Shown one piece after another: positions 6,045-44,648 of a stretch of 44,648 bases of DNA (positions are counted from its first letter, which is position 1; every line of letters starts with the position of its first letter). Source of the stretch: Octopus bimaculoides (taxonomy: Eukaryota). The DNA is taken from contig NC_068983.1 of assembly GCF_001194135.2 (NCBI RefSeq), forward strand, positions 131,908,170-131,952,817, in the 5' to 3' direction. A program made the translations under genes and the position numbers. The notes below the pieces were generated by a model. It had not been told where the DNA came from and made no database searches. It worked only from the letters and a program-made list of their open reading frames with translations.

Positions 6045-6613
6045 NNNNNNNNNNNNNNNNNNNNNNNNNNNNNNNNNNNNNNNNNNNNNNNNNNNNNNNN
6101 NNNNNNNNNNNNNNNNNNNNNNNNNNNNNNNNNNNNNNNNNNNNNNNNNNNNNNNNNNNNNNNNNNNNNNNNNNNNNNNNNNNNNNNNNNNNNNNNNNNN
6201 NNNNNNNNNNNNNNNNNNNNNNNNNNNNNNNNNNNNNNNNNNNNNNNNNNNNNNNNNNNNNNNNNNNNNNNNNNNNNNNNNNNNNNNNNNNNNNNNNNNN
6301 NNNNNNNNNNNNNNNNNNNNNNNNNNNNNNNNNNNNNNNNNNNNNNNNNNNNNNNNNNNNNNNNNNNNNNNNNNNNNNNNNNNNNNNNNNNNNNNNNNNN
6401 NNNNNNNNNNNNNNNNNNNNNNNNNNNNNNNNNNNNNNNNNNNNNNNNNNNNNNNNNNNNNNNNNNNNNNNNNNNNNNNNNNNNNNNNNNNNNNNNNNNN
6501 NNNNNNNNNNNNNNNNNNNNNNNNNNNNNNNNNNNNNNNNNNNNNNNNNNNNNNNNNNNNNNNNNNNNNNNNNNNNNNNNNNNNNNNNNNNNNNNNNNNN
6601 NNNNNNNNNNNNN
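6045..6613. other. Assembly gap (N run) between (GT)n and (TA)n
   Basis: N characters. Other gaps: 8329-8338, 8842-9009, 13910-13919, 28180-29116, 32380-32389, 37344-37773, 38839-39491, 40215-40224, 40585-40676. Confidence 1.
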
Positions 6614-7466: not shown

Positions 7467-7501
7467 GGTGTGTGTGTGTGTTTGAGTGTGTCTGTGTGTC
7501 T

Positions 7502-7532
<31 letters not shown>

Positions 7533-7547
7533 CGTGCGTGTGTGTGT
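7425..7547. repeat. (TA)n-(TG)n microsatellite
   Basis: Direct reading. Confidence 0.95.
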
Positions 7548-7564
7548 ATTATCATTAAGTAAAC

Positions 7565-7596
7565 TGAGGCCACAGAATGGCAGGTTCGTTAATGTG
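7565..7596 (+). mobile_element. Isolated SINE family A head fragment
   Basis: TGAGGCCACAGAATGGCAGGTTCGTTAATGTG is nearly identical to 7896-7927, the head of the SINE downstream. Confidence 0.55.
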
Positions 7597-7895
7597 TTTA
7601 GAAAATATAAATAAATTCATTATGTGATGGATTATAATTATTTTATGTTATATATTTTATATCATGTATTGCTTAAAGTATATATACATGCATATGTGTG
7701 TGTATGTGTGTGTGTGTGTCTATAAGTCTATGTATAATTATATATATGCATGTCTGTATATATATGCATGACTTTATAATTTATGTATATAAATGTGTGC
7801 TAATATATATGCATGTGTCTCTGTGTATATCTATGCATGTATGTGTGTATGTATGTTTGTATGTATGTATGTACATATATTATTATATATTAAAA

Positions 7896-8100
7896 TGAGG
7901 CAACAGAATGGCAGGGTCGTTAGTGTGACGGGCGAAATGATTTGTGATATTTGGATGCAGCTAAGTTCTGAGTGCAAATTCTGTAGAGGTCGACTTCGAA
8001 TTTCACCCTTTAGGGGTCGATAAAGTAAGTTGATGCGATACACTTTACCCCCTCACCCAAAATCTCAGGCTTTTGTGCCTACAGACTAAAGGATTATAAC
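7896..8100 (+). mobile_element. Decayed tRNA-derived SINE (family A)
   Basis: GTTCTGAGTGCAAATTC...GAGGTCGAC...GGGGTCGATAAA core and CAAAATCTCAGGCTTTTGTGCCTA tail, homologous to the copies at 24684 and 42681. Confidence 0.8.
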
Positions 8101-10829: not shown

Positions 10830-11010
<181 letters not shown>

Positions 11011-11014
11011 TATA

Positions 11015-11205
11015 ATAGCTTCAAATTTTGGCCCATGAGCTGCTATTTCGAGGGATGGAGTAAGTCGACCACATCGACGCCTGTATTAAACTGGTTCTTA
11101 TTTTACCGACCTCGAAGTATGAAAGGCAAAGTCGACCTACGTGGAATTTGAACTCGGAACGTGAAGAAGAATTAGCGCTGAGGAATTTGATCACCGCCTT
11201 AACAA
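11015..11205 (-). mobile_element. SINE family A, decayed
   Basis: ATGAAAGGCAAAGTCGACCTACGTGGAATTTGAACTCGGAACG is the reverse complement of the family A core; the 3' tail points into the (TAA) tract. Confidence 0.82.
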
Positions 11206-12857
11206 TGATAGTGATAATTTTGGCACAATGCCAGCAAATTATTGACGGGAGATTGGTGGATCTCAACAACCCTTGTGCTCAACTGTTGCTTATTTCATCG
11301 CCTCCGATATTTCGAAAACCGAAGTCATCCTGGGCGTTGTTTGAACGCAGAATGTAAAAAGCCAGAAGAAATGTTGCGTTATCGATTCTGCCTTCTTATT
11401 GCCTTGGCTCCGTCTCATTCTTCGTGCTGTACAGCTGGTCGACCCGCTAGAAATAGCAATCAAAATAGTTACAAAGAACAGAATGGAACCTATTTGTTCC
11501 TCACTGTTAGATTGACAATAAGAGCAGCAATATGATATTTCTATGTGGTGAAAATCATTGCTGAAATCAGTACAGATTGGCATAGAATTGGTTTGAATTA
11601 ATTGAACATATTCTATGCTTTCATTATAAAAAATATCGATAAATTGAAAACTTCGAACTAACCTGTATATTATGATATTACATGACACGTAGAACATTCA
11701 TTTTTTTACACCCACCCCATCCTGTATAAACTTCCTTATGCGACAAAATCAGTAATTTATTATTTTACAAACTCATTGTGTATTAGATTGAGTTTTGCAG
11801 TATTTGTCTCTTGTTTTTATGTTTTTAATTAAAATACATTTCTTAAATAGATTTTCTATTTTACTACTTGCAATATTTTATTCACCGAATTAATTTCCAT
11901 TTAGTTATACAGAAACACTTGAATGTAATTGGCATTTAGTTCCTAGTCAACAAGCAATATTGCAAGAAACAGTGGCAAAGTCCCCTCAGAACTATCACGT
12001 TTATGTATGAAATATTCGTAAAAGAGTCAAATGGATGACCAAGTTACCGATGAGATGATATTTTCCTCTGACCAAATTCACTCTATATCTTATAGTGACA
12101 GCAGACCTGAACGTGTAAACATCCTTTCCAAAGTGCATTTCTTGGAAAGCAATATTTTATGATATATCGTCAGTTGGCATGGAGGTAAGTCCCCCTAACT
12201 CGATGTTGCTCAAGAGAAAACATCAAGAGCTGAAATAGCTTAACACCACTTTCGATGCAAGTATTCTTGCCAGAATAACCTGAAAAGCGTATCACGAGGT
12301 GTCACTATGGAATTCGTAAGAATTGTAGTAATCCATTTCACTGCAATATCATTGCTTTTATAACTAAGCAAATAGATATTGAACAGTCGATCGTCTCTTT
12401 CCAAACTATGTTAGTAATATTTTACCCCAAACTTATTCGTCTTTAACGTTTACAGTGCTTGTTATTTATGCTGTTGTTGCTTAACCCTTTGGTAAACCTC
12501 ATAAATTAGCGCAGAATCAAAAGTATTCCAGCTGTGACTAGTTTGTGCTTTCCTGTTGGAATGCATCAACACATTAACATAACCGAAATTGAGACTGCAG
12601 CATATTTGACTGCTATTTCCCTCTGGTCAAGTGATCATCTACAAAGCGTCTCCTATTGAGAAATCCCTAGTTGTAAGTTGTTGCATCATTAGATTTTAGC
12701 CTAAGGTCCATTAAGATTCTCAGCATGAATTTTAATAAATAGTAATCTTGGTTGGAATTTCAGATCTCCAGTCGACAAGATCAGAACATTAGGTAGTTTA
12801 TATATTCTATCCCATTACAGCGTATGATGGTAGAATAAATTAGATATAAAGAATATT

Positions 12858-12990
12858 CTTTTCTACTCTAGGTACAAGGCTCGAAATTTTTGGGGAGGGG
12901 GCCAGTCGATTAGATCGACCCCACTACTCAACTGGTACTTAATTTATCGACCCCAAAAGGATTAAAGGCAAAGTCAACCTCGGCGGATTT
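12858..12990 (-). mobile_element. 5'-truncated SINE family A with a 15-bp target-site duplication
   Basis: Core CTGGTACTTAATTTATCGACCCCAAAAGGATTAAAGGCAAAGTCAACCTCGGCGG; GATATAAAGAATATT occurs at 12843-12857 and 12991-13005. Confidence 0.9.
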
Positions 12991-13744
12991 GATATAAAGA
13001 ATATTAAATACATTTCTGGTCGCTATGAGTTATTTTCTGAGCAAACTCTGAATACTGATCCCTAGTTAACAATTGATCGGTTATTATGATTTACTAAAAA
13101 TACCAGCCAGATTTCCCTTAAACCAAAGATACCAAATTATAATGCAAGCATCCATAATTTATCTTTACACCTTCAACACCTCCAAACTTCAAATTGTAAG
13201 GATAATTTGTGGACAGGCTGTAGATTATATTGTTAGACTGAGATACGATAAAAAAATCCAGGTAGACTATTTCCGATCAAATATCTGCTCGATCAACTTT
13301 CACGTGGGCTAAAACACCATCATTTCACTAATGTAAACGTGAGGATGCAGCTTGAGTATTTTGATAGTCGGGTGATTAATAGATTTCCTTTGCACTCGGC
13401 TATGCAGACGGGTGTAGATTGAACCCAAAGTGCATCAAATTAGATAAATGGTTTCAACCGTAATTGCGGGCTGACAATTCTGTCTTGAGAACTTAAGCTG
13501 ACGTCTCTCTCCGGAAGCCACTCATATAATACAAACGGTGTTCGGGCTAAATTCGACATTTTGTGTCAAAAGAAATGAAAACAATATCTCGGTCAAAAAT
13601 AAAAGTAATCATAAAATATCAAAAAATGTCAACTAAATTGTAGCAGGGAGTTTACTTTAAAGCAGTTTGCTAACAGTAGCCGGCCTCAACTTCCACCCCG
13701 GCTTGTAGCCATTTCTTCCTCTGTACCTTTGAACACGTAGGTTA

Positions 13745-24683: not shown

Positions 24684-24903
24684 GACGGCTAGCTGACGGA
24701 AACGTTAGCAAGCCGGGCGAAATACTTCACGGTTTTCGTCTGTCTTTACGTTCTAAGTTCAAATTCCGCCGAGGCCGACTTTTCCTTTCATCCTTTCAGG
24801 GTCGGTAAGTTAAGTACCATTTGCGTATTGGGATTGATCTAATCGACTGGCCTCCTCCCCCAAAATTTTCGGCCTTGTGCTTAGAGAAGAAAGGATTACT
24901 ATT
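24684..24903 (+). mobile_element. SINE family A, near full length
   Basis: GACGGCTAGCTGACGGAAACGTTAGC head; GTTCTAAGTTCAAATTCCGCCGAGGCCGACTTTTCCTTTCATCC core; CCCCAAAATTTTCGGCCTTGTGCTTAGAGAAGAAAG tail. An orphan tail copy lies just upstream at about 24637-24670. Confidence 0.9.
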
Positions 24904-34525: not shown

Positions 34526-37500
34526 CGCTACAGTAAAAAAATAAATTACATATTGGTTGACATATAAACTGCTCAGATTGTACTTATTGTTTCTGTCAAT
34601 ATAATTTCCGATGACGAATATTCAAATCAGTGTATCTTAAATTTTATCATAACAACTATCTACTTTGGAAGGAAGGAAGGCATATATAAAGGATATAAGC
34701 GACGGAGATTATAAAAACTGGGCCCATTGAAAACAGTTTTAATGAACTAAGTTACTAACTAGCTGATAAATAAGCCATTTGATTTTGCTAATCATATTTA
34801 AATTTAATTTCAAATATAATTTATATTTAATTCAATTTTAATATCATTTTATAGTACTCGTTTCAACAAACTCTGAGTTGTAGTTCTCACTTTTCATTTG
34901 TTTGATGGGATCTAACATCACGGATATATATTTTGATGTACATCTATCTACTCTGTCCAACATCCTGTTTGAGTTTCTAGTTGAATAAATACCAATCAAC
35001 AAAGGCATATGATATGCTTATTATTTGTGTTATTATCTGTAGGAACAATCATTTAGTCATACTGATTGTGAGTCTCTGGTTGTTTGGCTTTTAGTTAAGG
35101 AAGAATATTTATACAAGGATGACACTGCTAATTTCCATTCAGTTGATATTTATTCAGTATTTTTAAAGACTAAGGAAAAAGTAACGACACAGATAAAAGA
35201 GCTTCAAATGGCAAAATGAGCATACTCAATATGTTTTAAACAGGAAAATCAAGGTTAATCAACCAATTATTGAAGTCAAAGACCATTTGGATAGGAAATA
35301 TCTTGTAATCGAAGTATGAATACAAGCAGAATTAATGCACCTGAACAAGAAACAAATTATAGATATGTCTTAAAATAAAAATAACGAGAATGCTGGGGTG
35401 CAAAACATATAACTCATTTAATATTTTGCGCATTAGAAATGATTAAAGTTTGTTAAGAAACTTCCATAGCCAAAACACTATGCTATGCGCAAAATCCTGG
35501 ATATATCACTACTAGTTGGTCTGAATATATTACGTTCAGCACGTCTGATATAATAAATCCTTCAAAATAAAAACAATACATTGTACATACCCTACGTTTA
35601 CAGAACTGAAATAGGTGTGCAGTGAAAGTGAAGAATATAATTAACACCATCGAAAACAATAAACATGTTAAATGCATATGCAAAACATGAGCAACTTTCA
35701 TTAACTATCATGCTAGCATAAGACCGGAAGAAATACAGCTTATATTTACTGAAACAGTTTATAAAGAAGATAGGGAACAGACATAAGTTCATAGAAAATC
35801 ACAAGAAGTACCTGGAGCAATATAACCAATTAACTTGATTCAGTATATTACTGCTATTCCTTGGTTCATTTGGAAAAGCTAAAAAAAATAAAGATAATAA
35901 AGGAAAATCATTCACGGGAGTCTTCAGAACAGCATGGAAAAAACTACATACCGAAATTGCATAACATCCGAAATCGGAGAAATTGGAGATGGTTTGTGTA
36001 GGCAATAACTAGAAGAAGAGTTTAGAGTACAGCTTGTTAAGTTCACTCGTAGTGATAAGTGATGAATTTAACTTTTCAGAACAAGATCCCTCGTTTGAGG
36101 GAGAGAAAGCAATTGTGAGAAGACAGTGAGATAGGGAGGGAAAGGTTGGGAAATAGAGAGAGAGCAGTGAATTACTGGTGCTGTCTCTTAGGCTCACGCA
36201 ATGAGGCATTCAATTCTAAATTCAATTCTTGTATCATCCTTTATCTCACTTTTGTGGCATCTTATCTATACTCATAGACATGAATGCTTCGATTATGCCC
36301 GCATAAGAAATGCTAAAGAAAGGAAGAAATAGTATGTTTAACACGAGTACCTCGCTCTCATCAAAAGCATAACATTATCTCGATGTTTGCGTAACAGCAG
36401 ACAACCGAAGACTAGATTCTAAAGAAAACAGTTTTAGTTTCCTGTATTAAATCAGTTATTTTGTTGTTTACAAGTTATAATAGATCATTAATCTAATCAA
36501 ATGGAATTAATGCTAAATATTATCTGCAGACACCTTCAGGAAAATGGTTAAATAATACGGAATTATAATATTGGCAATTTTATTTCTTTTATAATATATT
36601 CTAAGTATTCTGCCTTTAAATTCGGGAAACGTGAAGAACTGGTTTATATGAAAAAAAAAACAAACCTAATTCAGGAAAAAAATAATTGAGAAATAGATAA
36701 GAATTAGAATGTATTTTGGTGAAATGGCATAAATATTATATTAGACAATATATACCCTGCAGTTACAACAGTTCTCTTTAAACAAATATCAGGCGGTTAT
36801 GTAGTTAGGCAGCCTTTAGACACCATTATTTTCTTATTTCATTTACGTAGGTTTGTGTCGGAAGATATTTCGTTACGTCTATAAATAGTAGTGTTTGTGT
36901 TAATGTGAGCTCCTATTTAAGATATGCTATATGTTGTAATATACGGAACTTCTGAGTGTTAATGTCGTCAAAAACTGGCAATTTTGTATAAAATTAATAT
37001 GATTAGTCTGTTGTGTCTGAGGAGAATCATTTTCTTTTTGTACCTTATAATCTAACACACACTCACCTGTAAATTTTCCACTTATTTTTATTTTCCTAAA
37101 CATTTCGTTGCGTCTTGCAAACTTTTCAAGAGTCAACACCATTGAAAAGGTTGCAATACACGCGCATGCGTACATGTATACATACTTATCTACATACATG
37201 CAAACATATTTACACACACACACATATACATATATAGCCGAAAATATGCATATGTATGCATGAACGCATGCGCGTGTATTTATCTATGCACATTCACATG
37301 CCTACACATATGCACAGCATATATATATATATATATATATATANNNNNNNNNNNNNNNNNNNNNNNNNNNNNNNNNNNNNNNNNNNNNNNNNNNNNNNNN
37401 NNNNNNNNNNNNNNNNNNNNNNNNNNNNNNNNNNNNNNNNNNNNNNNNNNNNNNNNNNNNNNNNNNNNNNNNNNNNNNNNNNNNNNNNNNNNNNNNNNNN

Positions 37501-38050
37501 NNNNNNNNNNNNNNNNNNNNNNNNNNNNNNNNNNNNNNNNNNNNNNNNNNNNNNNNNNNNNNNNNNNNNNNNNNNNNNNNNNNNNNNNNNNNNNNNNNNN
37601 NNNNNNNNNNNNNNNNNNNNNNNNNNNNNNNNNNNNNNNNNNNNNNNNNNNNNNNNNNNNNNNNNNNNNNNNNNNNNNNNNNNNNNNNNNNNNNNNNNNN
37701 NNNNNNNNNNNNNNNNNNNNNNNNNNNNNNNNNNNNNNNNNNNNNNNNNNNNNNNNNNNNNNNNNNNNNNNNNTATATATATGCTTTTAGTGAAATGTTA
37801 GAATCCTCATCTCTTTGCGTTACAATCACGGTTCTTTTACCTTATCTCCTGTGGTTATTTATTGCCTCACACTGTATTTATTCATTTCTCACTCTCAAAT
37901 GTTATCCATTGCTGACGAACATCTCTTAATGAAACTTAGCTTGCACCTTCTCTTAATAATCCTGTGGACAAGCATTTAATTGTAATACACCTTTTTATAA
38001 TACATCTCTTATTTAATTCATATTTATTACACAATAAATTTGGATATAAT

Positions 38051-38330
38051 ATGAAGCAGCATATTACCACAGGTGCTTGGTAGACTTCATTCATCGCTTA
38101 GTTTAAAAACAACACGTGGCAATTTCCACTCCATTTTGTCTCTTCACCTTAGATGAGATATTTTAATCCATATTTAAGTTGTTACATAATATGAAGTAGT
38201 ATATTACAATAGCTGTGTAATAGACTTCATTCATAACCGCTCGGTTTAAAAATTATATATTGCAATTTAGAACGTTTATTTGCATTCTGTTACTTCACCA
38301 AGTTTGAGATCTTTGGTCTAATTTAGTGTT
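38051..38330. repeat. Diverged tandem duplication, about 140-bp period
   Basis: ATGAAG(C/T)AG(C/T)ATATTAC at 38051/38191, TAGACTTCATTCAT at 38081/38221, plus further colinear blocks (GTTTAAAAA, GCAATTT, CTTCACC, GAGAT). Confidence 0.85.
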
Positions 38331-38793
38331 TATTCCTTTTTTGTCCGACTAGTGTAGGATGATTTGTAAAAAGGTCAGAAACGTTATCTATTCACTCTAA
38401 CGAAGCAATTAAGTATGAATTAAAAAGTTAGCTAAGTGGATTTAAAGGATTGTAACTTTCTAAGAATATATAGTTTTCTTTACCATTTCTCATTACCTCA
38501 CTTCACGCTATTTTTAACCTTGAAATAAATATAACGCTGACAGCACTGTACGAACAATAGTAATTAAAATTTGCTGAAATAAAGAAAAAGCTTATCTTCT
38601 ATCATCGAAAGCCGGCATATTAAATTTTACATTTTAAGCCGATGTATTGGAAAACGAGTAGAGTTTGGTATTAAATGCCTTCAGTTAATAATTTACGTCC
38701 AGTTACGTTCAAATTCTACCGCTATTATTTTAGCATCACATAATTCTGATGTCAATAACGTAATTATCGTTCAATACTTGGATCAATTTAGTG

Positions 38794-38838
<45 letters not shown>

Positions 38839-39515
38839 NNNNNNNNNNNNNNNNNNNNNNNNNNNNNNNNNNNNNNNNNNNNNNNNNNNNNNNNNNNNNN
38901 NNNNNNNNNNNNNNNNNNNNNNNNNNNNNNNNNNNNNNNNNNNNNNNNNNNNNNNNNNNNNNNNNNNNNNNNNNNNNNNNNNNNNNNNNNNNNNNNNNNN
39001 NNNNNNNNNNNNNNNNNNNNNNNNNNNNNNNNNNNNNNNNNNNNNNNNNNNNNNNNNNNNNNNNNNNNNNNNNNNNNNNNNNNNNNNNNNNNNNNNNNNN
39101 NNNNNNNNNNNNNNNNNNNNNNNNNNNNNNNNNNNNNNNNNNNNNNNNNNNNNNNNNNNNNNNNNNNNNNNNNNNNNNNNNNNNNNNNNNNNNNNNNNNN
39201 NNNNNNNNNNNNNNNNNNNNNNNNNNNNNNNNNNNNNNNNNNNNNNNNNNNNNNNNNNNNNNNNNNNNNNNNNNNNNNNNNNNNNNNNNNNNNNNNNNNN
39301 NNNNNNNNNNNNNNNNNNNNNNNNNNNNNNNNNNNNNNNNNNNNNNNNNNNNNNNNNNNNNNNNNNNNNNNNNNNNNNNNNNNNNNNNNNNNNNNNNNNN
39401 NNNNNNNNNNNNNNNNNNNNNNNNNNNNNNNNNNNNNNNNNNNNNNNNNNNNNNNNNNNNNNNNNNNNNNNNNNNNNNNNNNNNNNNNNNNTATATATAT
39501 ATATATATATATATA

Positions 39516-39666
39516 TTAGTAGTTCTTTGACTGCTATTTCTAAATTTTCAGTATGTTGGTGAAGCAATCTCATGCTGATCCCTATATACTTATAATTATA
39601 AATGTTTTTACCAATAAAGGGCTTTTTTTGCATACGGAACTACTTGGCAAAAGTGTTGATTATTAA
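39516..39666 (+). repeat. 151-bp direct repeat, copy 1
   Basis: Aligns without indels to 40064-40214 with 8 substitutions. Confidence 0.95.
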
Positions 39667-39907
39667 TTTTATTAACTAATTGGCAATTCCCTGCCTTATA
39701 TCTGTATTTATATTGATGGTCTTCTATTGGATGGTTAAAATGCAGTCTTTTTTTGCGGGACTATTTGTGGCGCACATGGGGTAATTCTTGAGGAGAGATG
39801 CGGAACTCACTGGTCGATAAATTTGTGAATGCATTTTCTAATGTGATTTTGATGTCGCATGGTCAAATACACATGAGTATATGTGCATTTTCAGGTTTAT
39901 TTTGTAC

Positions 39908-39966
39908 ATCATGCTGATGAGTGGAAAAGAATATTATATTCTTAATCACGAAACGTCGTACATGAT
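39908..39966 (+). ncRNA. Type I hammerhead ribozyme motif (minimal helix III, Penelope/retrozyme type)
   Basis: Helix I AUCAUG (39908-13) pairs with CAUGAU (39961-66). CUGAUGA at 39914-20. Helix II GUGG/UCAC, a 2x2 AA/AA loop, then AAGAAUA/UAUUCUU. GAAA at 39950-53. Helix III A-C-[GUC]-G-U. Cleavage triplet GUA, predicted cut 3' of A39960. All core nucleotides are present. Confidence 0.88.
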
Positions 39967-40063
39967 TAACTAAAGGCAAGTTTGTTTTTATTTTCTGTTC
40001 TGTTTTTGTTCTATGTGTGCCGTAAATATCGCCATCCGTTAGAGAAAAAATTGTAGTTTAGAA

Positions 40064-40214
40064 TTAGTAGTTCTTTGACTGGTATTTCTAAATTTTCAGT
40101 ATGTTGGTGAAGCAATCTCATGCTGATCCCTATATATTTATAATTATAAATATTTTTACCGATAAAGGTCTTTTTTTGCATACTGAACTACTTGGCAAAA
40201 TTGTTAATTATTAA
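40064..40214 (+). repeat. 151-bp direct repeat, copy 2 (ends at a gap)
   Basis: Matches 39516-39666; period 548 bp; cut off by the 10-N gap at 40215. Confidence 0.95.
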
Positions 40215-40224
40215 NNNNNNNNNN

Positions 40225-40283
<59 letters not shown>

Positions 40284-40676
40284 TATACATACATATATAT
40301 ATACATATATGTATAAATACCTACATATATATATACATATGTAACTGTACTCATACATATACATGGTGCGATGGTTAAATTGCCGCCCTATTATATTTTT
40401 TATTTCGCACATGCACCTTGCTTTATTTTATTTTGTCAACTACACAGTATGGTAGGGTCAGTGACTGTAAATATATCACCTGCTCTGACCAGTAATCTTC
40501 ATGCTTGCAGCAAATGTGAACTACTTTGCAAATCGTTAGTATTCGATTTAAGCATTACAACTGACAAAGAAAGAGTACGCTTTCNNNNNNNNNNNNNNNN
40601 NNNNNNNNNNNNNNNNNNNNNNNNNNNNNNNNNNNNNNNNNNNNNNNNNNNNNNNNNNNNNNNNNNNNNNNNNNNN

Positions 40677-40755
40677 GGGGGGCTAAACATAGAGGGAACA
40701 CACAAGGGCAGACAAAGGGATTAAGTTGATTACATCAACCCCCGTACATAACTGA
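40677..40755 (-). mobile_element. SINE family A 3' part, alternative tail
   Basis: Reverse complement reads CAGTTATGTACGGGGGTTGATGTAATCAACTTAATCCCTTTGTCTGCCCTTGTGTGTTCCCTCTATGTTTAGCCCC. Confidence 0.7.
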
Positions 40756-41344
40756 GAATTGTTTCAATATTTCATCAGTTCTCCGAAGCATCAGCGCCAC
40801 CTAAAACCGAGGTATCGCTTTTGTAGAATCATAGTCCCATGTTGGGCTCTAATGGATGAACAATTTGAGTCTAAGCATGTGTTCGATGTGTCTATATTTC
40901 TGAAAGATATTCACGTGAGAAAATATTATGATTACAGACCTTAATTTTTTCCATCCTCATTGTGAATATCAAGCGTACATATTAATTGTTTAAGCGGAAA
41001 CACAGTTAATGTAGTAATCTGTGCTGAGTAAGATTTCTAATACCCATCGTTGCTGCAATCGAAACCAAGAACAATAATAGTGACTTTGTTCTCATTCCGC
41101 AATAAGACATAGTTTAAAAGTTTATTGAAGGAAGTGAGGAATAGGATTTACTGGATCCACTTTACAGTGAAATTAGGATATCCATTAAAATTTCGAAATA
41201 ATGATTTTTGAGGAACTGTTGCCTTCGATTAGGTTCTTTTCTTTTTCTCTTTGTCCAGACAGGTTACATATATTCCTTAGTGTCATGACCTTTCATCTGC
41301 AAATTTACATCAGATCAAATCAGTGTATGATGATGTTGGCTTAT

Positions 41345-41925
41345 TTTGTGTGTGTTTCTGTGTATTTGTGTTAGCATGTGTATGTGTGCATGTATCTGCT
41401 TTAATGTATGCAAGATTCTTGTATATGTAACAGTGAATGTGTGCTTGTGCATATATTCTTTGGCATGTTTATCAATAATTTTCATGAGTGTTTATCTGTG
41501 TATACACTTATACTGTCTGTGTGTGTGTTCTTTCTGTTTACCTTTCTGTGTGTGTGTGTGTGTGTATCTGTGGGAGATGCTCGTATGCATCTTTGTCCTG
41601 TTGTGTATCGCGTTGCGTGTGCTTGCGATTTCGCTTCCATTTAATGTATCTGCGTGTGTTTGCTTTTTTGGTTGTTTTGCATTCTTTCTCTGTGTTTGCA
41701 TAAATTTGTGTACGTATGGTTGAGTTTTGTGTATCTGTATGTATGCTTATGTGCTTGTGTGTGGCCTTGCTTCCATACGAAGGCGTTTCTGTCTATCTCT
41801 CTCTTTCTCTCTCTCTCTCCCTCTTTCTCTCCTACCTTTCTCACTTTTTCTCTCCCCTTCGCCGCCCTCCCTCTCTCTCTTTCTGTTCGTGCAGGTGATT
41901 TTGTGTAGTGGTTTGTGTTATATAT
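41345..41925. repeat. Degenerate (TG)n-rich then (CT)n-rich low-complexity tract
   Basis: Direct reading; source of the many C/V/L/S-rich pseudo-ORFs. Confidence 0.85.
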
Positions 41926-42470
41926 ATGATGATATCTGATTAAAACGCAATGGAAACATCAGACCTTTTACATGGCTTTAGGATGTATGGCTGCTTAAAC
42001 GTGCCAAATGATCACGACAATGCACACAATGTTTTATAGACATTAAAAACACCCGCTAAAATACTGTCTTAATGGAAATCGTATCGTTACTCAGAGTTAA
42101 AACGTGACTTGACTTATTATCTCATCTCTTGTTATTTTATTTTTATATACTGTCTGTATTGCTTATGAAATATTTTCTTAAAAGCAGTAGTTAACCTTCA
42201 GAAATATTCTGCTGTTATTACAACCGGGTATTTACAAACGGCGAATATGCACAATAATAAAAACGATAGAGAATATTTACTCATGTTAAAAGCAACAAAC
42301 CAACAGTTAGTGCAAAATATTTCCATGACGGTTTTAAGATATGATGAAAACAATATATTTGGTAAAATTTTACGTTTTTGTTTTGCTTTAAACGTTATAT
42401 CTTTTTCTCACAAATTACTATAGATTCGTGCAGCATAATGGTGGTTGCGCTTTTTCATTCGTTCTCATAA

Positions 42471-42650
42471 CATTCGTTTCTACTCTAAGCACAAGGCCCG
42501 ACATTTTGAGAGAAAAGACCAGTCGATTAGATCGACTCCAATACGCCACTGGTACTTAATTCACTGACCCAGAAAAGATGAAAGGCAAAGTTGACCTCAG
42601 CGGGAATTTGAACTCAGAATGTGCTAACGTTTCTGCCAACTCGCCTCTTT
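42471..42650 (-). mobile_element. SINE family A with internal deletion and a 14-bp target-site duplication
   Basis: Core GATGAAAGGCAAAGTTGACCTCAGCGGGAATTTGAACTCAGAA; ATTCGTTCTCATAA occurs at 42457-42470 and 42651-42664. Confidence 0.9.
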
Positions 42651-42680
42651 ATTCGTTCTCATAATATTAAATGCCTGCCT

Positions 42681-42910
42681 AAAGGTGGTAAACTGTGAAA
42701 ATCGTTAGATCGTAGCAAAAACAGCTTGTCCGTATTTTTCTGCTTTTTTGTTTTTTTTTAAGGTCTGAGTTCAAATTCCTCCGAGGTCGACTTTGCCTTT
42801 CATCTTTTCGGAGTCCATCAAATAATTACTTACTGAGCACTTGGATCGGTGTATTTGATTAATCTTCTCCTGCCAAATTTGCGGCTTTGTGCCAAAGTTT
42901 GAAACCAGTT
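42681..42910 (+). mobile_element. SINE family A, opposite orientation to its neighbour
   Basis: TCTGAGTTCAAATTCCTCCGAGGTCGACTTTGCCTTTCATC core and GCCAAATTTGCGGCTTTGTGCCAAAGTTTGAAACC tail. Confidence 0.85.
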
Positions 42911-42924
42911 TTATATGCCTAAAG

Positions 42925-43020
42925 ATGTTCAAATCGTGTTGCGGTGAACTTCGTCTTTCATCTCAAGATCGATAAGTTATAGTGAATGTTAAGTTCTGTA
43001 GTCGATATAACCCACTACAC
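42925..43020 (+). mobile_element. Decayed SINE family A core fragment
   Basis: GTTCAAATCGTGTTGCGGTGAACTTCGTCTTTCATC...GATCGATAAG. Confidence 0.5.
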
Positions 43021-44648
43021 AGTTCAAAATATCTAATCTAATCACTTTGTTACTTTGAGGCTGCATCTCTTTGTAATTTGATGCTAGTAAGAAAATAACT
43101 ACTTCGAAATGCATGAACCCATTAATTCACAGAAGGACGCTCCGAACAAAACATAGTGTGGTTAGATCCTTTTTGTTTACATCAAGAATAATTCTCCATG
43201 ACAAACTACATTGAATAGCTTTTTTCATGCGGGTTGATGTATCTCTCAAAAGTTTTTCAACTAGTATCAATGTTGTATCTATCTATTTATCTATTTATCT
43301 ATCTCTATCTGCCTTTCTATCTCCCCCTCTCTCTCTCTCTGTATATATATGTTTGTGTGTGTGAGTGTGTGTATGTGTGCGCGTATGTATGCAAAGAAAC
43401 ACCTGCATTGCTGTATGATATCTACATTTTCTAATACATCTCCTTTTATACTTGACTCTTACTTGACAATCAACAGAAACACACATATATGTATACACAT
43501 ATGTAAATACATATAAATACATATATATTCCTATAAGTAGAAGTATATATGTTGTAAAATACAAGTACATAAGAAAGCAAAGCTGATATACATACAAGGT
43601 AAAAGTCTACTACTGACAAACACTTATTTGGGGATGATTAGGCTCAAATATGAATCTCTGCTTGTTTGAGATATACATATACCTAAACATATACATATAC
43701 CTAAGCAGTAAATGTGCCATCAAAAATCATGATATTTTCTATAGGATCATATACAATCTTATTTGTAGCGTTGGCTTTGGGCAATACTCTGCTCTATTTG
43801 AGGAAAGAACAATGCTTGATGTGGAGATGTTGTGAAAGAAAAAATAAACATCGAGGAATTGCCATAGTGTTTAGAGGAATCAGGAAATGAGGGGTAGGTG
43901 TAAGTGTAGAATGGGAAAATATAGGTTAAAGAAAAACCAATCAATGTGAATGTGGTGAATAGAATTATATTACAATAATATTGTATTCTGCTCTCTTTGA
44001 TAAGTAAACAGCCTCGTTTACATAGTGAAATGGTGCTTACTGAATTATAGAGGTAGTAAGGCTGCTGATTGTGTTTCAATGTCGTAGAAAATATTTGTTG
44101 CTGTGTTTACATTTTACAACATAATTCACGTCCGGTGCTCAAATATATAAGAGGGAATTAATTTTGTACTACAGTGTATGAGCTTCTTTACATCTGAGCA
44201 GAATTCATGATTCTTGTTTCCATTTGAACATGGTTTTTAATTGTGAACTTTTCTACACATAAGCTGACACACGCGTGTTTATGTCTACAAACTTTCTACA
44301 CATAAGCAGACACACGCGCGCGGGTGTACATAGAGGCACATACGTTTGTATATACATTTATATACATATGTATATTTCTCTGTGTGTGTAAGTGTATTCC
44401 ATTGTTTTTGTTTTTTGTTGGTCTTTTATAAATAACTCAGAAAAACACTTTCTAAAAGAAATTTTGAAAAGCTATACTTTTATGTATTCGAGTTACTCTT
44501 GGTTATAGATATATATGGTCATAAAGTTCCCATTCGTTTCAGGACTACTATTTCCCAGTGCAATCTTAGACTCAAAAACCAAGCCAACTTTCTAACCGGT
44601 TCTTGTCTTAACTGAGATTATACTACGCAAATACATAAAAGTATATAT

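What the first reader, a model, noticed from the sequence alone, without database searches (positions are those of the whole stretch)
39516..40214. Retrozyme-like architecture: 548-bp non-coding unit with one hammerhead, 151-bp terminal direct repeats, between (TA)n tracts
39516-39666 and 40064-40214 are 94.7% identical (8 substitutions, no indels), giving at least 1.28 copies of a 548-bp unit with the ribozyme once per unit. (TA)n lies on both sides, and the right side is across a 10-N gap that may hide more units. Greater-than-unit-length, protein-free, hammerhead-bearing repeats are the signature of metazoan non-LTR retrozymes and of non-autonomous Penelope-like elements. In those systems multimeric transcripts self-cleave into monomers that can circularise and be reverse-transcribed by a partner RT. 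A cephalopod family of this size targeting TA microsatellites could be undescribed; I cannot check the literature or databases here.
Basis: partly seen in the sequence, partly recalled or inferred. Interest (0 to 1): 0.85.

Follow-up and report, generated by a model that had tools for sequence, protein, structure and literature searches.

The report
Hammerhead-ribozyme retroelement copy in octopus-like DNA
A 548-base non-coding repeat carrying one self-cleaving hammerhead ribozyme motif sits next to a TA microsatellite as slightly more than one copy, which fits an already known kind of animal mobile element (retrozymes and Penelope-like elements), so it is probably a new example and not a new kind.

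Summary
39515-39666 and 40063-40214 are 152-nt direct repeats with 8 substitutions and a 548-bp period. The unit has stop codons in all six frames. One complete type I hammerhead lies at 39908-39966 (+), with cleavage after A39960.

My descriptor expects 0.003 such motifs per random window. The Rfam score is only 20.2 bits against a threshold of 34, because helix II is long.

New here: the ribozyme sits in a 267-nt RNA domain (39762-40028) closed by an unbroken 23-bp helix with 7 G·U pairs. It folds far better than shuffles (z = -5.2) on the ribozyme strand only. Helix III is palindromic, so cleavage should need two ribozyme copies.

No reverse transcriptase or endonuclease remnant lies within about 4 kb on either side, and there is no second copy in the window.

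The best reading is an old, more-than-unit-length insertion of a hammerhead-bearing non-coding retroelement of the retrozyme/Penelope kind. A 5'-truncated Penelope-like tail with a partial tandem copy is not excluded.

Unit size and TA targeting both fall within published ranges. Copy number, array size and RNA circles could not be tested, because no cephalopod genome was reachable. This is a new member of a known kind, of modest interest.

The parts
39492..39516 (.). (TA)12 tract directly abutting the left edge of the repeat, on the same contig. Probable target microsatellite.
   Evidence: Read directly. TA tracts listed.
39515..40062 (+). One complete 548-bp non-coding unit
   Evidence: Period 548 from the repeat spacing. 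Stops in all six frames. GC 0.328.
39515..39666 (+). Direct repeat, copy 1 (start of the first unit)
   Evidence: 152 nt, 94.7% identical to 40063-40214.
40063..40214 (+). Direct repeat, copy 2 (start of a second unit, cut off by the contig end at a 10-N gap)
   Evidence: The head-to-tail junction at 40062/40063 carries no TA tract.
39762..40028 (+). Structured RNA domain that contains the ribozyme. It consists of a closing helix, a stem extension, a long hairpin and the hammerhead arm.
   Evidence: MFE -82.1 kcal/mol, identical to the centroid, z = -5.18, 0 of 200 shuffles as stable. The minus strand gives -42.3, z = -1.8.
39762..39784 (+). 5' arm of the 23-bp closing helix
   Evidence: Pairs without interruption with 40006-40028. 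7 G·U pairs, mean pair probability 0.96.
40006..40028 (+). 3' arm of the 23-bp closing helix
   Evidence: By my estimate, about 3e-4 chance of such a run in a 548-nt sequence of this composition.
39816..39901 (+). Long imperfect hairpin (10+8+5+6 bp) just upstream of the ribozyme
   Evidence: Pair probabilities 0.96-0.98. Also present in the fold.
39908..39966 (+). Type I hammerhead motif. Helix I is 6 bp (39908-13/39961-66). Core is CUGAUGA. Helix II is 4 bp, a 2x2 internal loop, 7 bp and a triloop (39921-39949). GAAA follows. Helix III is ACG-U-CGU (39953-39959). H17 is A39960.
   Evidence: RF00163 at 20.2 bits, E = 0.0063 on 101 nt. Only descriptor hit in the window, 0.003 expected. Folds.
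39960..39961 (+). Predicted self-cleavage site (after GUA)
   Evidence: Position of H17 in the Rfam alignment. Not tested biochemically.
40215..40224 (.). 10-N gap of unknown true size. 10 N recurs four times in the window and may be a placeholder. It may hide the rest of the second unit or further units.
   Evidence: Gap list.
40225..40364 (.). (AT)26 running into a degenerate TA/CA microsatellite on the next contig. It is linked to the unit by scaffolding only.

Best explanation
This is an old insertion, slightly longer than one unit, of a non-coding retroelement that carries a hammerhead ribozyme. It belongs to the animal non-LTR retrozyme kind, meaning a non-autonomous relative of Penelope-like elements (PLEs), and it landed in a (TA)n microsatellite of an octopus-like genome.

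Proposed mechanism:
1. The + strand is transcribed from arrays or from read-through.
2. The ribozyme has a weak, palindromic helix III. It therefore becomes active when two copies pair as a double hammerhead, and it cuts after A39960.
3. This releases 548-nt monomers with 5'-OH and 2',3'-cyclic phosphate ends.
4. A host RNA ligase closes them into compact, highly paired circles.
5. A PLE reverse transcriptase with its GIY-YIG endonuclease nicks a TA repeat and copies more than one turn of the template, which leaves a partial tandem.

Shown here: the sequence anatomy only, namely the repeat, the motif, the strand-specific structure, the lack of coding capacity and the TA junction. Inferred from the literature: every biochemical step.

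The two repeat copies differ by 5.3%, with no sign of compensating changes. This particular copy is therefore probably old (very roughly 5-10 million years) and decaying.
For: The repeat and period are exact.

The hammerhead has a complete core, G10.1-C11.1 and a GUA cleavage triplet. It is the only descriptor hit in the window, against 0.003 expected.

The double-hammerhead fold scores -26.7 kcal/mol, against 2 x -7.3 for the monomeric active-like fold. This fits dimer-type animal ribozymes.

As a circle, the whole unit folds at -146 kcal/mol against -113 +/- 6 for shuffles (z = -5.5). Sixteen control segments of the same window give z between -1.9 and +1.7, and the opposite strand gives z = -1.8.

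The 267-nt ribozyme domain is closed by a 23-bp helix with 7 G·U pairs. That helix can only form in + strand RNA.

There is no ORF in the unit and no RT or GIY-YIG remnant in 4.2 kb upstream or 4.4 kb downstream.

The left edge abuts (TA)12 on the same contig.

Literature: retrozymes are low-GC, non-coding, tandem, carry a type I hammerhead and are highly self-paired. Their unit sizes run from 51 to 972 bp and they are related to PLE pseudo-LTRs. PLEs show a bias toward TA microsatellites. PLEs are abundant in octopus genomes.
Against: Only one ribozyme and 1.28 units are assembled, so the defining tandem of two or more ribozymes is not seen.

There is no other copy in 41.7 kb, and no relative was found in any collection I could reach. 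Those collections hardly cover cephalopods, so this negative is weak.

The Rfam score is below threshold.

The long helix II is more typical of the minimal hammerheads found in autonomous PLEs.

Most of the structural signal comes from the 267-nt domain around the ribozyme. It does not need a circular or tandem context, so it fits a PLE tail equally well.

The right-hand boundary is lost in a gap.

Substitutions between the two copies break 3 of the 4 predicted pairs they hit.
Confidence: 0.45

Rival explanations
1. This is the 3' tail of an autonomous Penelope-like element, not a separate non-autonomous family. A copy 5'-truncated to its last 548 bp (39667-40214) is preceded by a still shorter copy holding the last ~150 bp (39517-39666). 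This is the usual PLE partial tandem (pseudo-LTR), inserted in (TA)n. On this reading, 548 bp is only the truncation length of this one insertion. The hammerhead is the ordinary PLE ribozyme, about 250 nt from the element's 3' end.
For: PLE insertions are typically heavily 5'-truncated and arranged as a truncated copy followed by a longer copy. They carry hammerheads near their 3' ends and favour microsatellites, including (TA)n. Most dispersed single hammerheads in animal genomes were attributed to truncated PLEs. The long helix II and palindromic helix III resemble PLE variants. Only 1.28 units and one ribozyme are present. The structural signal is local to the ribozyme domain. Octopus genomes hold many Penelope copies.
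Against: The 548 bp contain no coding remnant at only about 5% decay. This would require a tail of at least 548 bp with no ORF. The bulged nucleotide between A9 and G10.1 and the short 4-5 bp helix I, both typical of minimal PLE hammerheads, are absent. The reading assumes that the element ends exactly at the contig end, 40214, which is unknown.
Confidence: 0.3
2. This is a local tandem duplication or a small satellite of ordinary non-coding DNA. By chance it contains a hammerhead-like string, and it has no RNA-level function or mobility.
For: The Rfam score is below the gathering threshold, and its E-value scaled to the whole window is about 3. There is only one locus.
Against: The motif sits inside a strand-specific structured domain, with z = -5.2 on the + strand and -1.8 on the - strand. 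It also lies within the only long direct repeat of the window. These two features are independent of the descriptor. All core positions, the G10.1-C11.1 pair, the GUA triplet and the palindromic helix III match the animal consensus. The head-to-tail junction carries no microsatellite, which argues against unequal exchange between TA tracts.
Confidence: 0.1
3. The greater-than-unit length is an assembly artefact. The 723-bp contig would be a chimeric path through a repeat, or two haplotypes or paralogous copies joined. It may also be misplaced in the scaffold, in which case neither the partial tandem nor the right TA flank is real.
For: The contig is a short island between a 653-N gap and a 10-N gap in a draft assembly whose gaps cluster at microsatellites. 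The second copy ends exactly at the contig end. PLE-type tandem and inverted insertions are known to upset short-read assemblies.
Against: The junction 40062/40063 lies inside one contig, so reads or k-mers joining unit end to unit start must exist. The two copies differ at 8 sites spread over 152 nt. This fits two real paralogous stretches better than one stretch read twice. This rival would not remove the ribozyme or the structured domain.
Confidence: 0.1

Closest known systems
Metazoan non-LTR retrozymes (Cervera and de la Peña 2020, PMC7229834; review PMC7761336; Li, Clavereau and Pollet 2026 preprint, 10.64898/2026.07.22.740005)
   Same: Non-coding, low-GC unit with one type I hammerhead. 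Head-to-tail arrangement. Weak helix III that favours cleavage as a dimer. Predicted compact, highly self-paired RNA. Unit length within the reported range of 51-972 bp. Host genome rich in PLEs.
   Different: Only 1.28 units and one ribozyme are assembled. Helix II is much longer than the canonical 4 bp. No conserved loop 1-loop 2 contacts could be recognised. Copy number and circular RNA are unknown. No cephalopod example is described in the papers I could search.
Pseudo-LTRs and 3' tails of Penelope-like elements with minimal hammerheads (Cervera and de la Peña 2014, PMC4209133; Craig et al. 2021, PMC8557442)
   Same: Partial tandem (more than one unit). Hammerhead with a long helix II and a palindromic helix III. 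Insertion next to a (TA)n microsatellite. Trouble for short-read assembly.
   Different: No RT/GIY-YIG ORF or remnant in the unit or within about 4 kb. No bulged base after A9. Helix I is 6 bp, not 4-5. Naiads, the clade for which (TA)n targeting is documented, lack canonical hammerheads.
Newt satellite 2 and Schistosoma Sm-alpha hammerhead repeats (classical animal type I hammerheads; from my own knowledge and as cited in PMC4209133 and PMC7229834)
   Same: Type I ribozyme in a short non-coding repeat. The core and the GU...AC start of helix II match the RF00163 consensus. Dimer-dependent helix III.
   Different: Those are high-copy arrays of about 330 bp with a short helix II. Here a single locus with a 548-bp unit is seen.

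Membership tests
Hammerhead ribozyme, type I (Rfam RF00163) | Conserved core C3-U4-G5-A6-N7-G8-A9, G12-A13-A14, A15.1-U16.1, H17 not G | tested here: met
   CUGAUGA at 39914-39920, GAAA at 39950-39953, U39959, A39960.
Hammerhead ribozyme, type I (Rfam RF00163) | Three helices around the core, with helix I open | tested here: met
   Helix I is 6 bp. Helix II is 4+7 bp. Helix III is only 2 bp as a hairpin, or 3+3 bp in a dimer.
Hammerhead ribozyme, type I (Rfam RF00163) | Score at or above the curated gathering threshold (34 bits) | tested here: not met
   20.2 bits. Found only when 101 nt are searched. The loss is due to a 25-nt insertion in helix II.
Hammerhead ribozyme, type I (Rfam RF00163) | Self-cleavage at the predicted site | not testable with these tools
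   Needs in vitro transcription of monomeric and dimeric constructs.
Metazoan non-LTR retrozyme | Head-to-tail tandem with a ribozyme in each unit (at least two ribozymes) | tested here: inconclusive
   A head-to-tail junction is present, but only 1.28 units and one ribozyme are assembled. The second ribozyme would fall beyond the 10-N gap.
Metazoan non-LTR retrozyme | No coding capacity, no LTR/PBS/PPT, GC below 45% | tested here: met
   Stops in all frames. GC 0.328.
Metazoan non-LTR retrozyme | RNA predicted to be compact and highly self-paired | tested here: met
   z = -5.5 for the circular unit and -5.2 for the ribozyme domain. Controls lie near 0.
Metazoan non-LTR retrozyme | Multi-copy family dispersed in the genome | not testable with these tools
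   No cephalopod genome was available. There is no second copy in the window. Indirect searches were empty.
Metazoan non-LTR retrozyme | Expressed as linear and circular monomer RNA | not testable with these tools
   Needs RNA data.
Autonomous Penelope-like element | ORF with reverse transcriptase and GIY-YIG endonuclease | tested here: not met
   No Pfam hit in six-frame translations of 34600-38838 and 40225-44648. No ORF in the unit. The gaps of 653, 10 and 92 N are too small as stated.
Autonomous Penelope-like element | Partial tandem forming a pseudo-LTR, with a hammerhead near the 3' end | tested here: inconclusive
   A partial tandem is present. The true 3' end is lost in the gap.
Minimal PLE hammerhead (Cervera and de la Peña 2014) | Extra unpaired base between A9 and G10.1, helix I of 4-5 bp, helix II of 6-8 bp, palindromic 15.2-16.2 | tested here: inconclusive
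   The extra base is absent and helix I is 6 bp (not met). The long helix II and the palindromic ACGUCGU are met.

The most novel reading that the evidence does not exclude
The unit is the founding example of an undescribed cephalopod retrozyme family. Such a family would produce unusually large (548-nt) circular RNAs folded around a G·U-rich 23-bp helix. Its insertions into (TA)n tracts would carry the target preference of a PLE endonuclease. That would give direct genomic evidence for which autonomous element mobilises animal retrozymes.
Probability: 0.3. Interest if true: 0.45.

Novelty: new member of a known kind. Interest (0 to 1): 0.3.

Why it matters
Suppose the unit proves to be a multi-copy family with fixed ends. 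It would then extend hammerhead retrozymes to cephalopods, where I found none described. Its TA-microsatellite junctions would offer a simple genomic test of the proposal that Penelope-like elements mobilise animal retrozymes. If the family were expressed, it would also flag a possible source of structured circular RNA in octopus tissues. If instead it is a truncated Penelope tail, it is routine repeat annotation. In both cases the element class, the ribozyme type, the unit size range and the target bias are already in the literature.

Tried and rejected
1. Other copies in the window. blastn at word sizes 7-11 with relaxed scoring found only the self-match and TA tracts.

2. A diverged copy on the next contig (40365-40584). 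Two short matches first looked collinear in a tandem frame. The best local score of 16 lies within the range for control segments (11-18) and was reached by 2% of shuffles. I rejected it as chance.

3. Relatives through spurious ORFs. A 56-aa ORF, and then a concatenation of all stop-free six-frame segments of the unit, were searched against 5.8 billion predicted proteins. Neither gave a hit. The power is weak, because short ORFs in eukaryotic non-coding DNA are rarely called.

4. Two exact-pattern scans of JGI metagenome contigs with the ribozyme and its flanks found nothing.

5. RT/GIY-YIG remnants in the flanks: none found.

6. Compensatory changes between the two repeat copies: none found. 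Three of the 4 substitutions in predicted pairs break the pair.

7. A second, degenerate ribozyme. The 10-mer TCATGCTGAT occurs at 39570-39579 and 40118-40127 as well as at the 5' side of the ribozyme (39909-39918). No GAAA or helix context follows it, and a shared 10-mer in 700 nt is not unusual.

8. The miRNA-like Rfam hits at 40222-40371 are artefacts of the TA/CA microsatellite.

9. No tRNA-like head was found.

10. The free cofold of two ribozyme copies gave only an extended duplex and was not informative. My first hand-written dimer structure was topologically wrong, and I redid it.

Full report
**1. What is in the sequence**

The stretch 39492-40214 is a 723-bp contig. It lies between a 653-N gap on the left and a 10-N gap on the right.

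It opens with (TA)12, and non-repetitive sequence starts at about 39517. The segments 39515-39666 and 40063-40214 are direct repeats of 152 nt. They have 8 substitutions, no indels, 94.7% identity and a start-to-start distance of 548. This gives one full 548-bp unit plus the first 152 nt of a second, or 1.28 units. The second copy stops exactly at the contig end.

The head-to-tail junction (…GTAGTTTAGAA|TTAGTAGTTC…) lies inside the contig and carries no microsatellite.

The unit has stop codons in all six frames. The longest ORF is 56 aa. GC content is 33%.

This is the only long direct repeat in the window apart from a SINE-like family. No other copy of the unit, even a diverged one, is present in the 41.7 kb of determined sequence.

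**2. The ribozyme**

A complete type I hammerhead can be drawn at 39908-39966 on the + strand:
- Helix I: AUCAUG/CAUGAU, 6 bp.
- Core: CUGAUGA.
- Helix II: GUGG/UCAC, then a 2x2 internal loop, then AAGAAUA/UAUUCUU capped by UUA.
- GAAA.
- Helix III: ACG-U-CGU.
- H17: A39960, so cleavage falls after the GUA triplet, between 39960 and 39961.

Rfam's Hammerhead_1 model aligns every conserved position. It scores only 20.2 bits against a gathering score of 34, because it pays for a 25-nt insertion in helix II. It reports the match only when 101 nt are searched, with E = 0.0063. The match is absent from the whole-window scan and from the 1.1-kb scan. Scaled to the whole window, that E-value would be about 3.

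I therefore wrote an independent relaxed descriptor. It requires helix I of at least 5 bp, CUGANGA, helix II of at least 3 bp and up to 45 nt in total, GAAA, an A15.1-U16.1 pair plus at least one more pair, and H17 not G. It finds this site and no other on either strand. In 300 first-order Markov random windows it found one hit in total, or 0.003 per window. The motif is therefore unlikely to arise by chance within one window. A reader who scans many windows would still meet chance examples now and then.

As a hairpin, helix III has 2 bp with a 3-nt loop. The Rfam alignment gives 3 bp with a 1-nt loop, which cannot form. The sequence ACGUCGU is palindromic around its central U.

The monomeric active-like fold is worth only -7.3 kcal/mol, and an inactive fold at -14.4 is preferred. 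In a double hammerhead, helices I and III form between two copies. That fold scores -26.7 kcal/mol.

This is the behaviour described for most animal type I hammerheads. A weak helix III with a small palindromic loop blocks cleavage in monomers and allows it in tandem transcripts.

**3. A strand-specific RNA structure around the ribozyme (new here)**

I folded the 548-nt unit as a circle from cleavage site to cleavage site. It gives -146.0 kcal/mol, against -113.2 +/- 6.0 for 60 dinucleotide-preserving shuffles (z = -5.5). Sixteen 548-nt control segments from the same window give z between -1.9 and +1.7. The reverse complement of the unit gives -83.5 kcal/mol, z = -1.8.

Most of the signal comes from a 267-nt domain, 39762-40028. 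Its components are:
- An uninterrupted 23-bp closing helix, 39762-39784 with 40006-40028. Seven of its pairs are G·U, and the mean pair probability is 0.96.
- A short stem extension.
- A 29-bp imperfect hairpin at 39816-39901.
- The hammerhead as the third arm.

With the standard tool the domain folds at -82.1 kcal/mol. The MFE structure equals the centroid, z = -5.18, and 0 of 200 shuffles fold as well. Its opposite strand gives -42.3, z = -1.8. The rest of the unit is only mildly structured, with z = -2.2.

G·U pairs exist only in the + strand RNA. The structure therefore points to selection on an RNA of the same polarity as the ribozyme. This evidence is independent of the hammerhead descriptor.

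The caveat is that the domain is local. It does not need a circular or tandem context, so it supports "a structured ribozyme-bearing RNA" and not specifically "a circle".

**4. Surroundings**

Six-frame translations of 34600-38838 and 40225-44648 have no Pfam match to reverse transcriptase, GIY-YIG or anything else at E <= 1. The single exception is an irrelevant hit at E = 0.3. No long ORF lies nearby.

The stated gap sizes of 653, 10 and 92 N are too small for a PLE ORF. The recurring 10-N gaps may be placeholders for an unknown size.

The (TA)n argument needs care:
- The left tract is physically joined to the unit, and the repeat begins immediately at its end.
- The right tract is on another contig.
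- The window holds 15 TA tracts of 12 bp or more, and 7 of them abut N gaps. TA at contig ends is therefore common in this assembly.
- The sequence beyond the right tract (40365-40584) is not related to the unit. Its best local alignment is at background level.

On the source organism, a 45-mer that I recalled from the abundant octopus SINE matches the window twice with 3 or fewer mismatches, against 0 expected. Five copies of that repeat occur in the window. An octopus origin is therefore plausible, but it rests on my memory of that SINE.

**5. What it most likely is**

The anatomy fits the animal non-LTR retrozyme/PLE complex. The anatomy is a non-coding, low-GC unit with one dimer-type type I hammerhead, a compact strand-specific RNA fold, a head-to-tail junction, more than one unit in length, and a TA microsatellite at the edge.

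The literature describes the following:
- Retrozymes are short tandem repeats with type I hammerheads. They are transcribed, self-cleaved and ligated into highly paired circles, and probably copied by PLE enzymes.
- Their consensus lengths range from 51 to 972 bp, many copies are monomers, and they are close relatives of PLE pseudo-LTRs.
- PLE insertions are typically 5'-truncated partial tandems. They are biased toward microsatellites, including (TA)n for Naiads, and a similar bias was proposed for Neptune.
- Penelope elements are abundant in octopus genomes.

I therefore commit to an old retrozyme-type insertion (confidence 0.45). The closest rival, at 0.3, is a 5'-truncated PLE tail preceded by a shorter truncated copy. 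On that reading, 548 bp is merely the truncation length of this insertion.

- Against the rival: the 548 bp hold no coding remnant, the extra base after A9 is absent, and helix I is 6 bp.
- For the rival: helix II is long, only one ribozyme is present, and the structure is local.

Together, these two PLE-related readings take about 0.75. A chance motif in a local duplication and an assembly artefact at the tandem junction take about 0.1 each. The artefact reading would not remove the ribozyme or the structured domain.

The two repeat copies differ by 5.3%, a Jukes-Cantor distance of about 0.055. The calibration quoted for O. vulgaris repeats equates JC 0.09 with about 25 My. If the copies were identical at insertion, this gives very roughly 5-10 My.

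Three of the four substitutions that fall in predicted pairs break them. This copy is therefore probably decaying. The intact ribozyme is not evidence of selection at this level of divergence.

**6. Novelty and limits**

I found no paper in the library that links retrozymes or hammerheads with cephalopods, beyond a passing mention of cephalopod Naiads. A cephalopod family may well be undescribed. Even so, the class of element, the ribozyme type, the unit size and the target bias are all known. The right label is a new member of a known kind.

The decisive test is a genome-wide search for copies, their ends and their neighbours. I could not run it, because none of the reachable collections holds cephalopod genomes. 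Indirect attempts through predicted proteins and metagenome contigs were empty.

I set interest at 0.3.

Noticed in passing
window 11052-11167, 12852-12992, 24733-24898, 42469-42623, 42745-42892: Five copies, in both orientations and 72-83% identical, of a ~150-bp interspersed repeat. A 45-mer I recalled from the abundant octopus SINE matches two of them with 3 or fewer mismatches. This suggests an octopus origin for the window.
   Followed up: partly
window gaps at 6045, 8329, 8842, 13910, 28180, 32380, 37344, 38839, 40215, 40585: The window has ten N gaps, four of them exactly 10 N. Seven of the 15 TA tracts of 12 bp or more abut a gap, so contig breaks in this assembly cluster at TA microsatellites. 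Any 'flanked by (TA)n' argument across a gap is weakened by this.
   Followed up: yes
window 40222-40371: Rfam E-value hits to mir-297, mir-1277, mir-568 and similar models (36 bits or less, against thresholds of 75-100) fall on the TA/CA microsatellite. They are low-complexity artefacts.
   Followed up: yes
window 10830-11017; also 2734-2833 and 1540-1609: A compound trinucleotide microsatellite, (TTC)25(TAC)26(TAA)14, with perfect blocks, plus (AAG)33 and (AAT)23. The trinucleotide arrays are unusually long and pure.
   Followed up: no
window 39570-39579, 40118-40127 and 39909-39918: The 10-mer TCATGCTGAT occurs in both repeat copies and again at the 5' side of the hammerhead (helix I plus the start of the core). 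It could be a relic of a second ribozyme or a chance match. No GAAA or helix context follows it.
   Followed up: partly
window 38046-38125 vs 38186-38268; 7486-7596 vs 7815-7927: Two further short local direct repeats (about 75% identity, 80-113 nt) of unknown nature.
   Followed up: no
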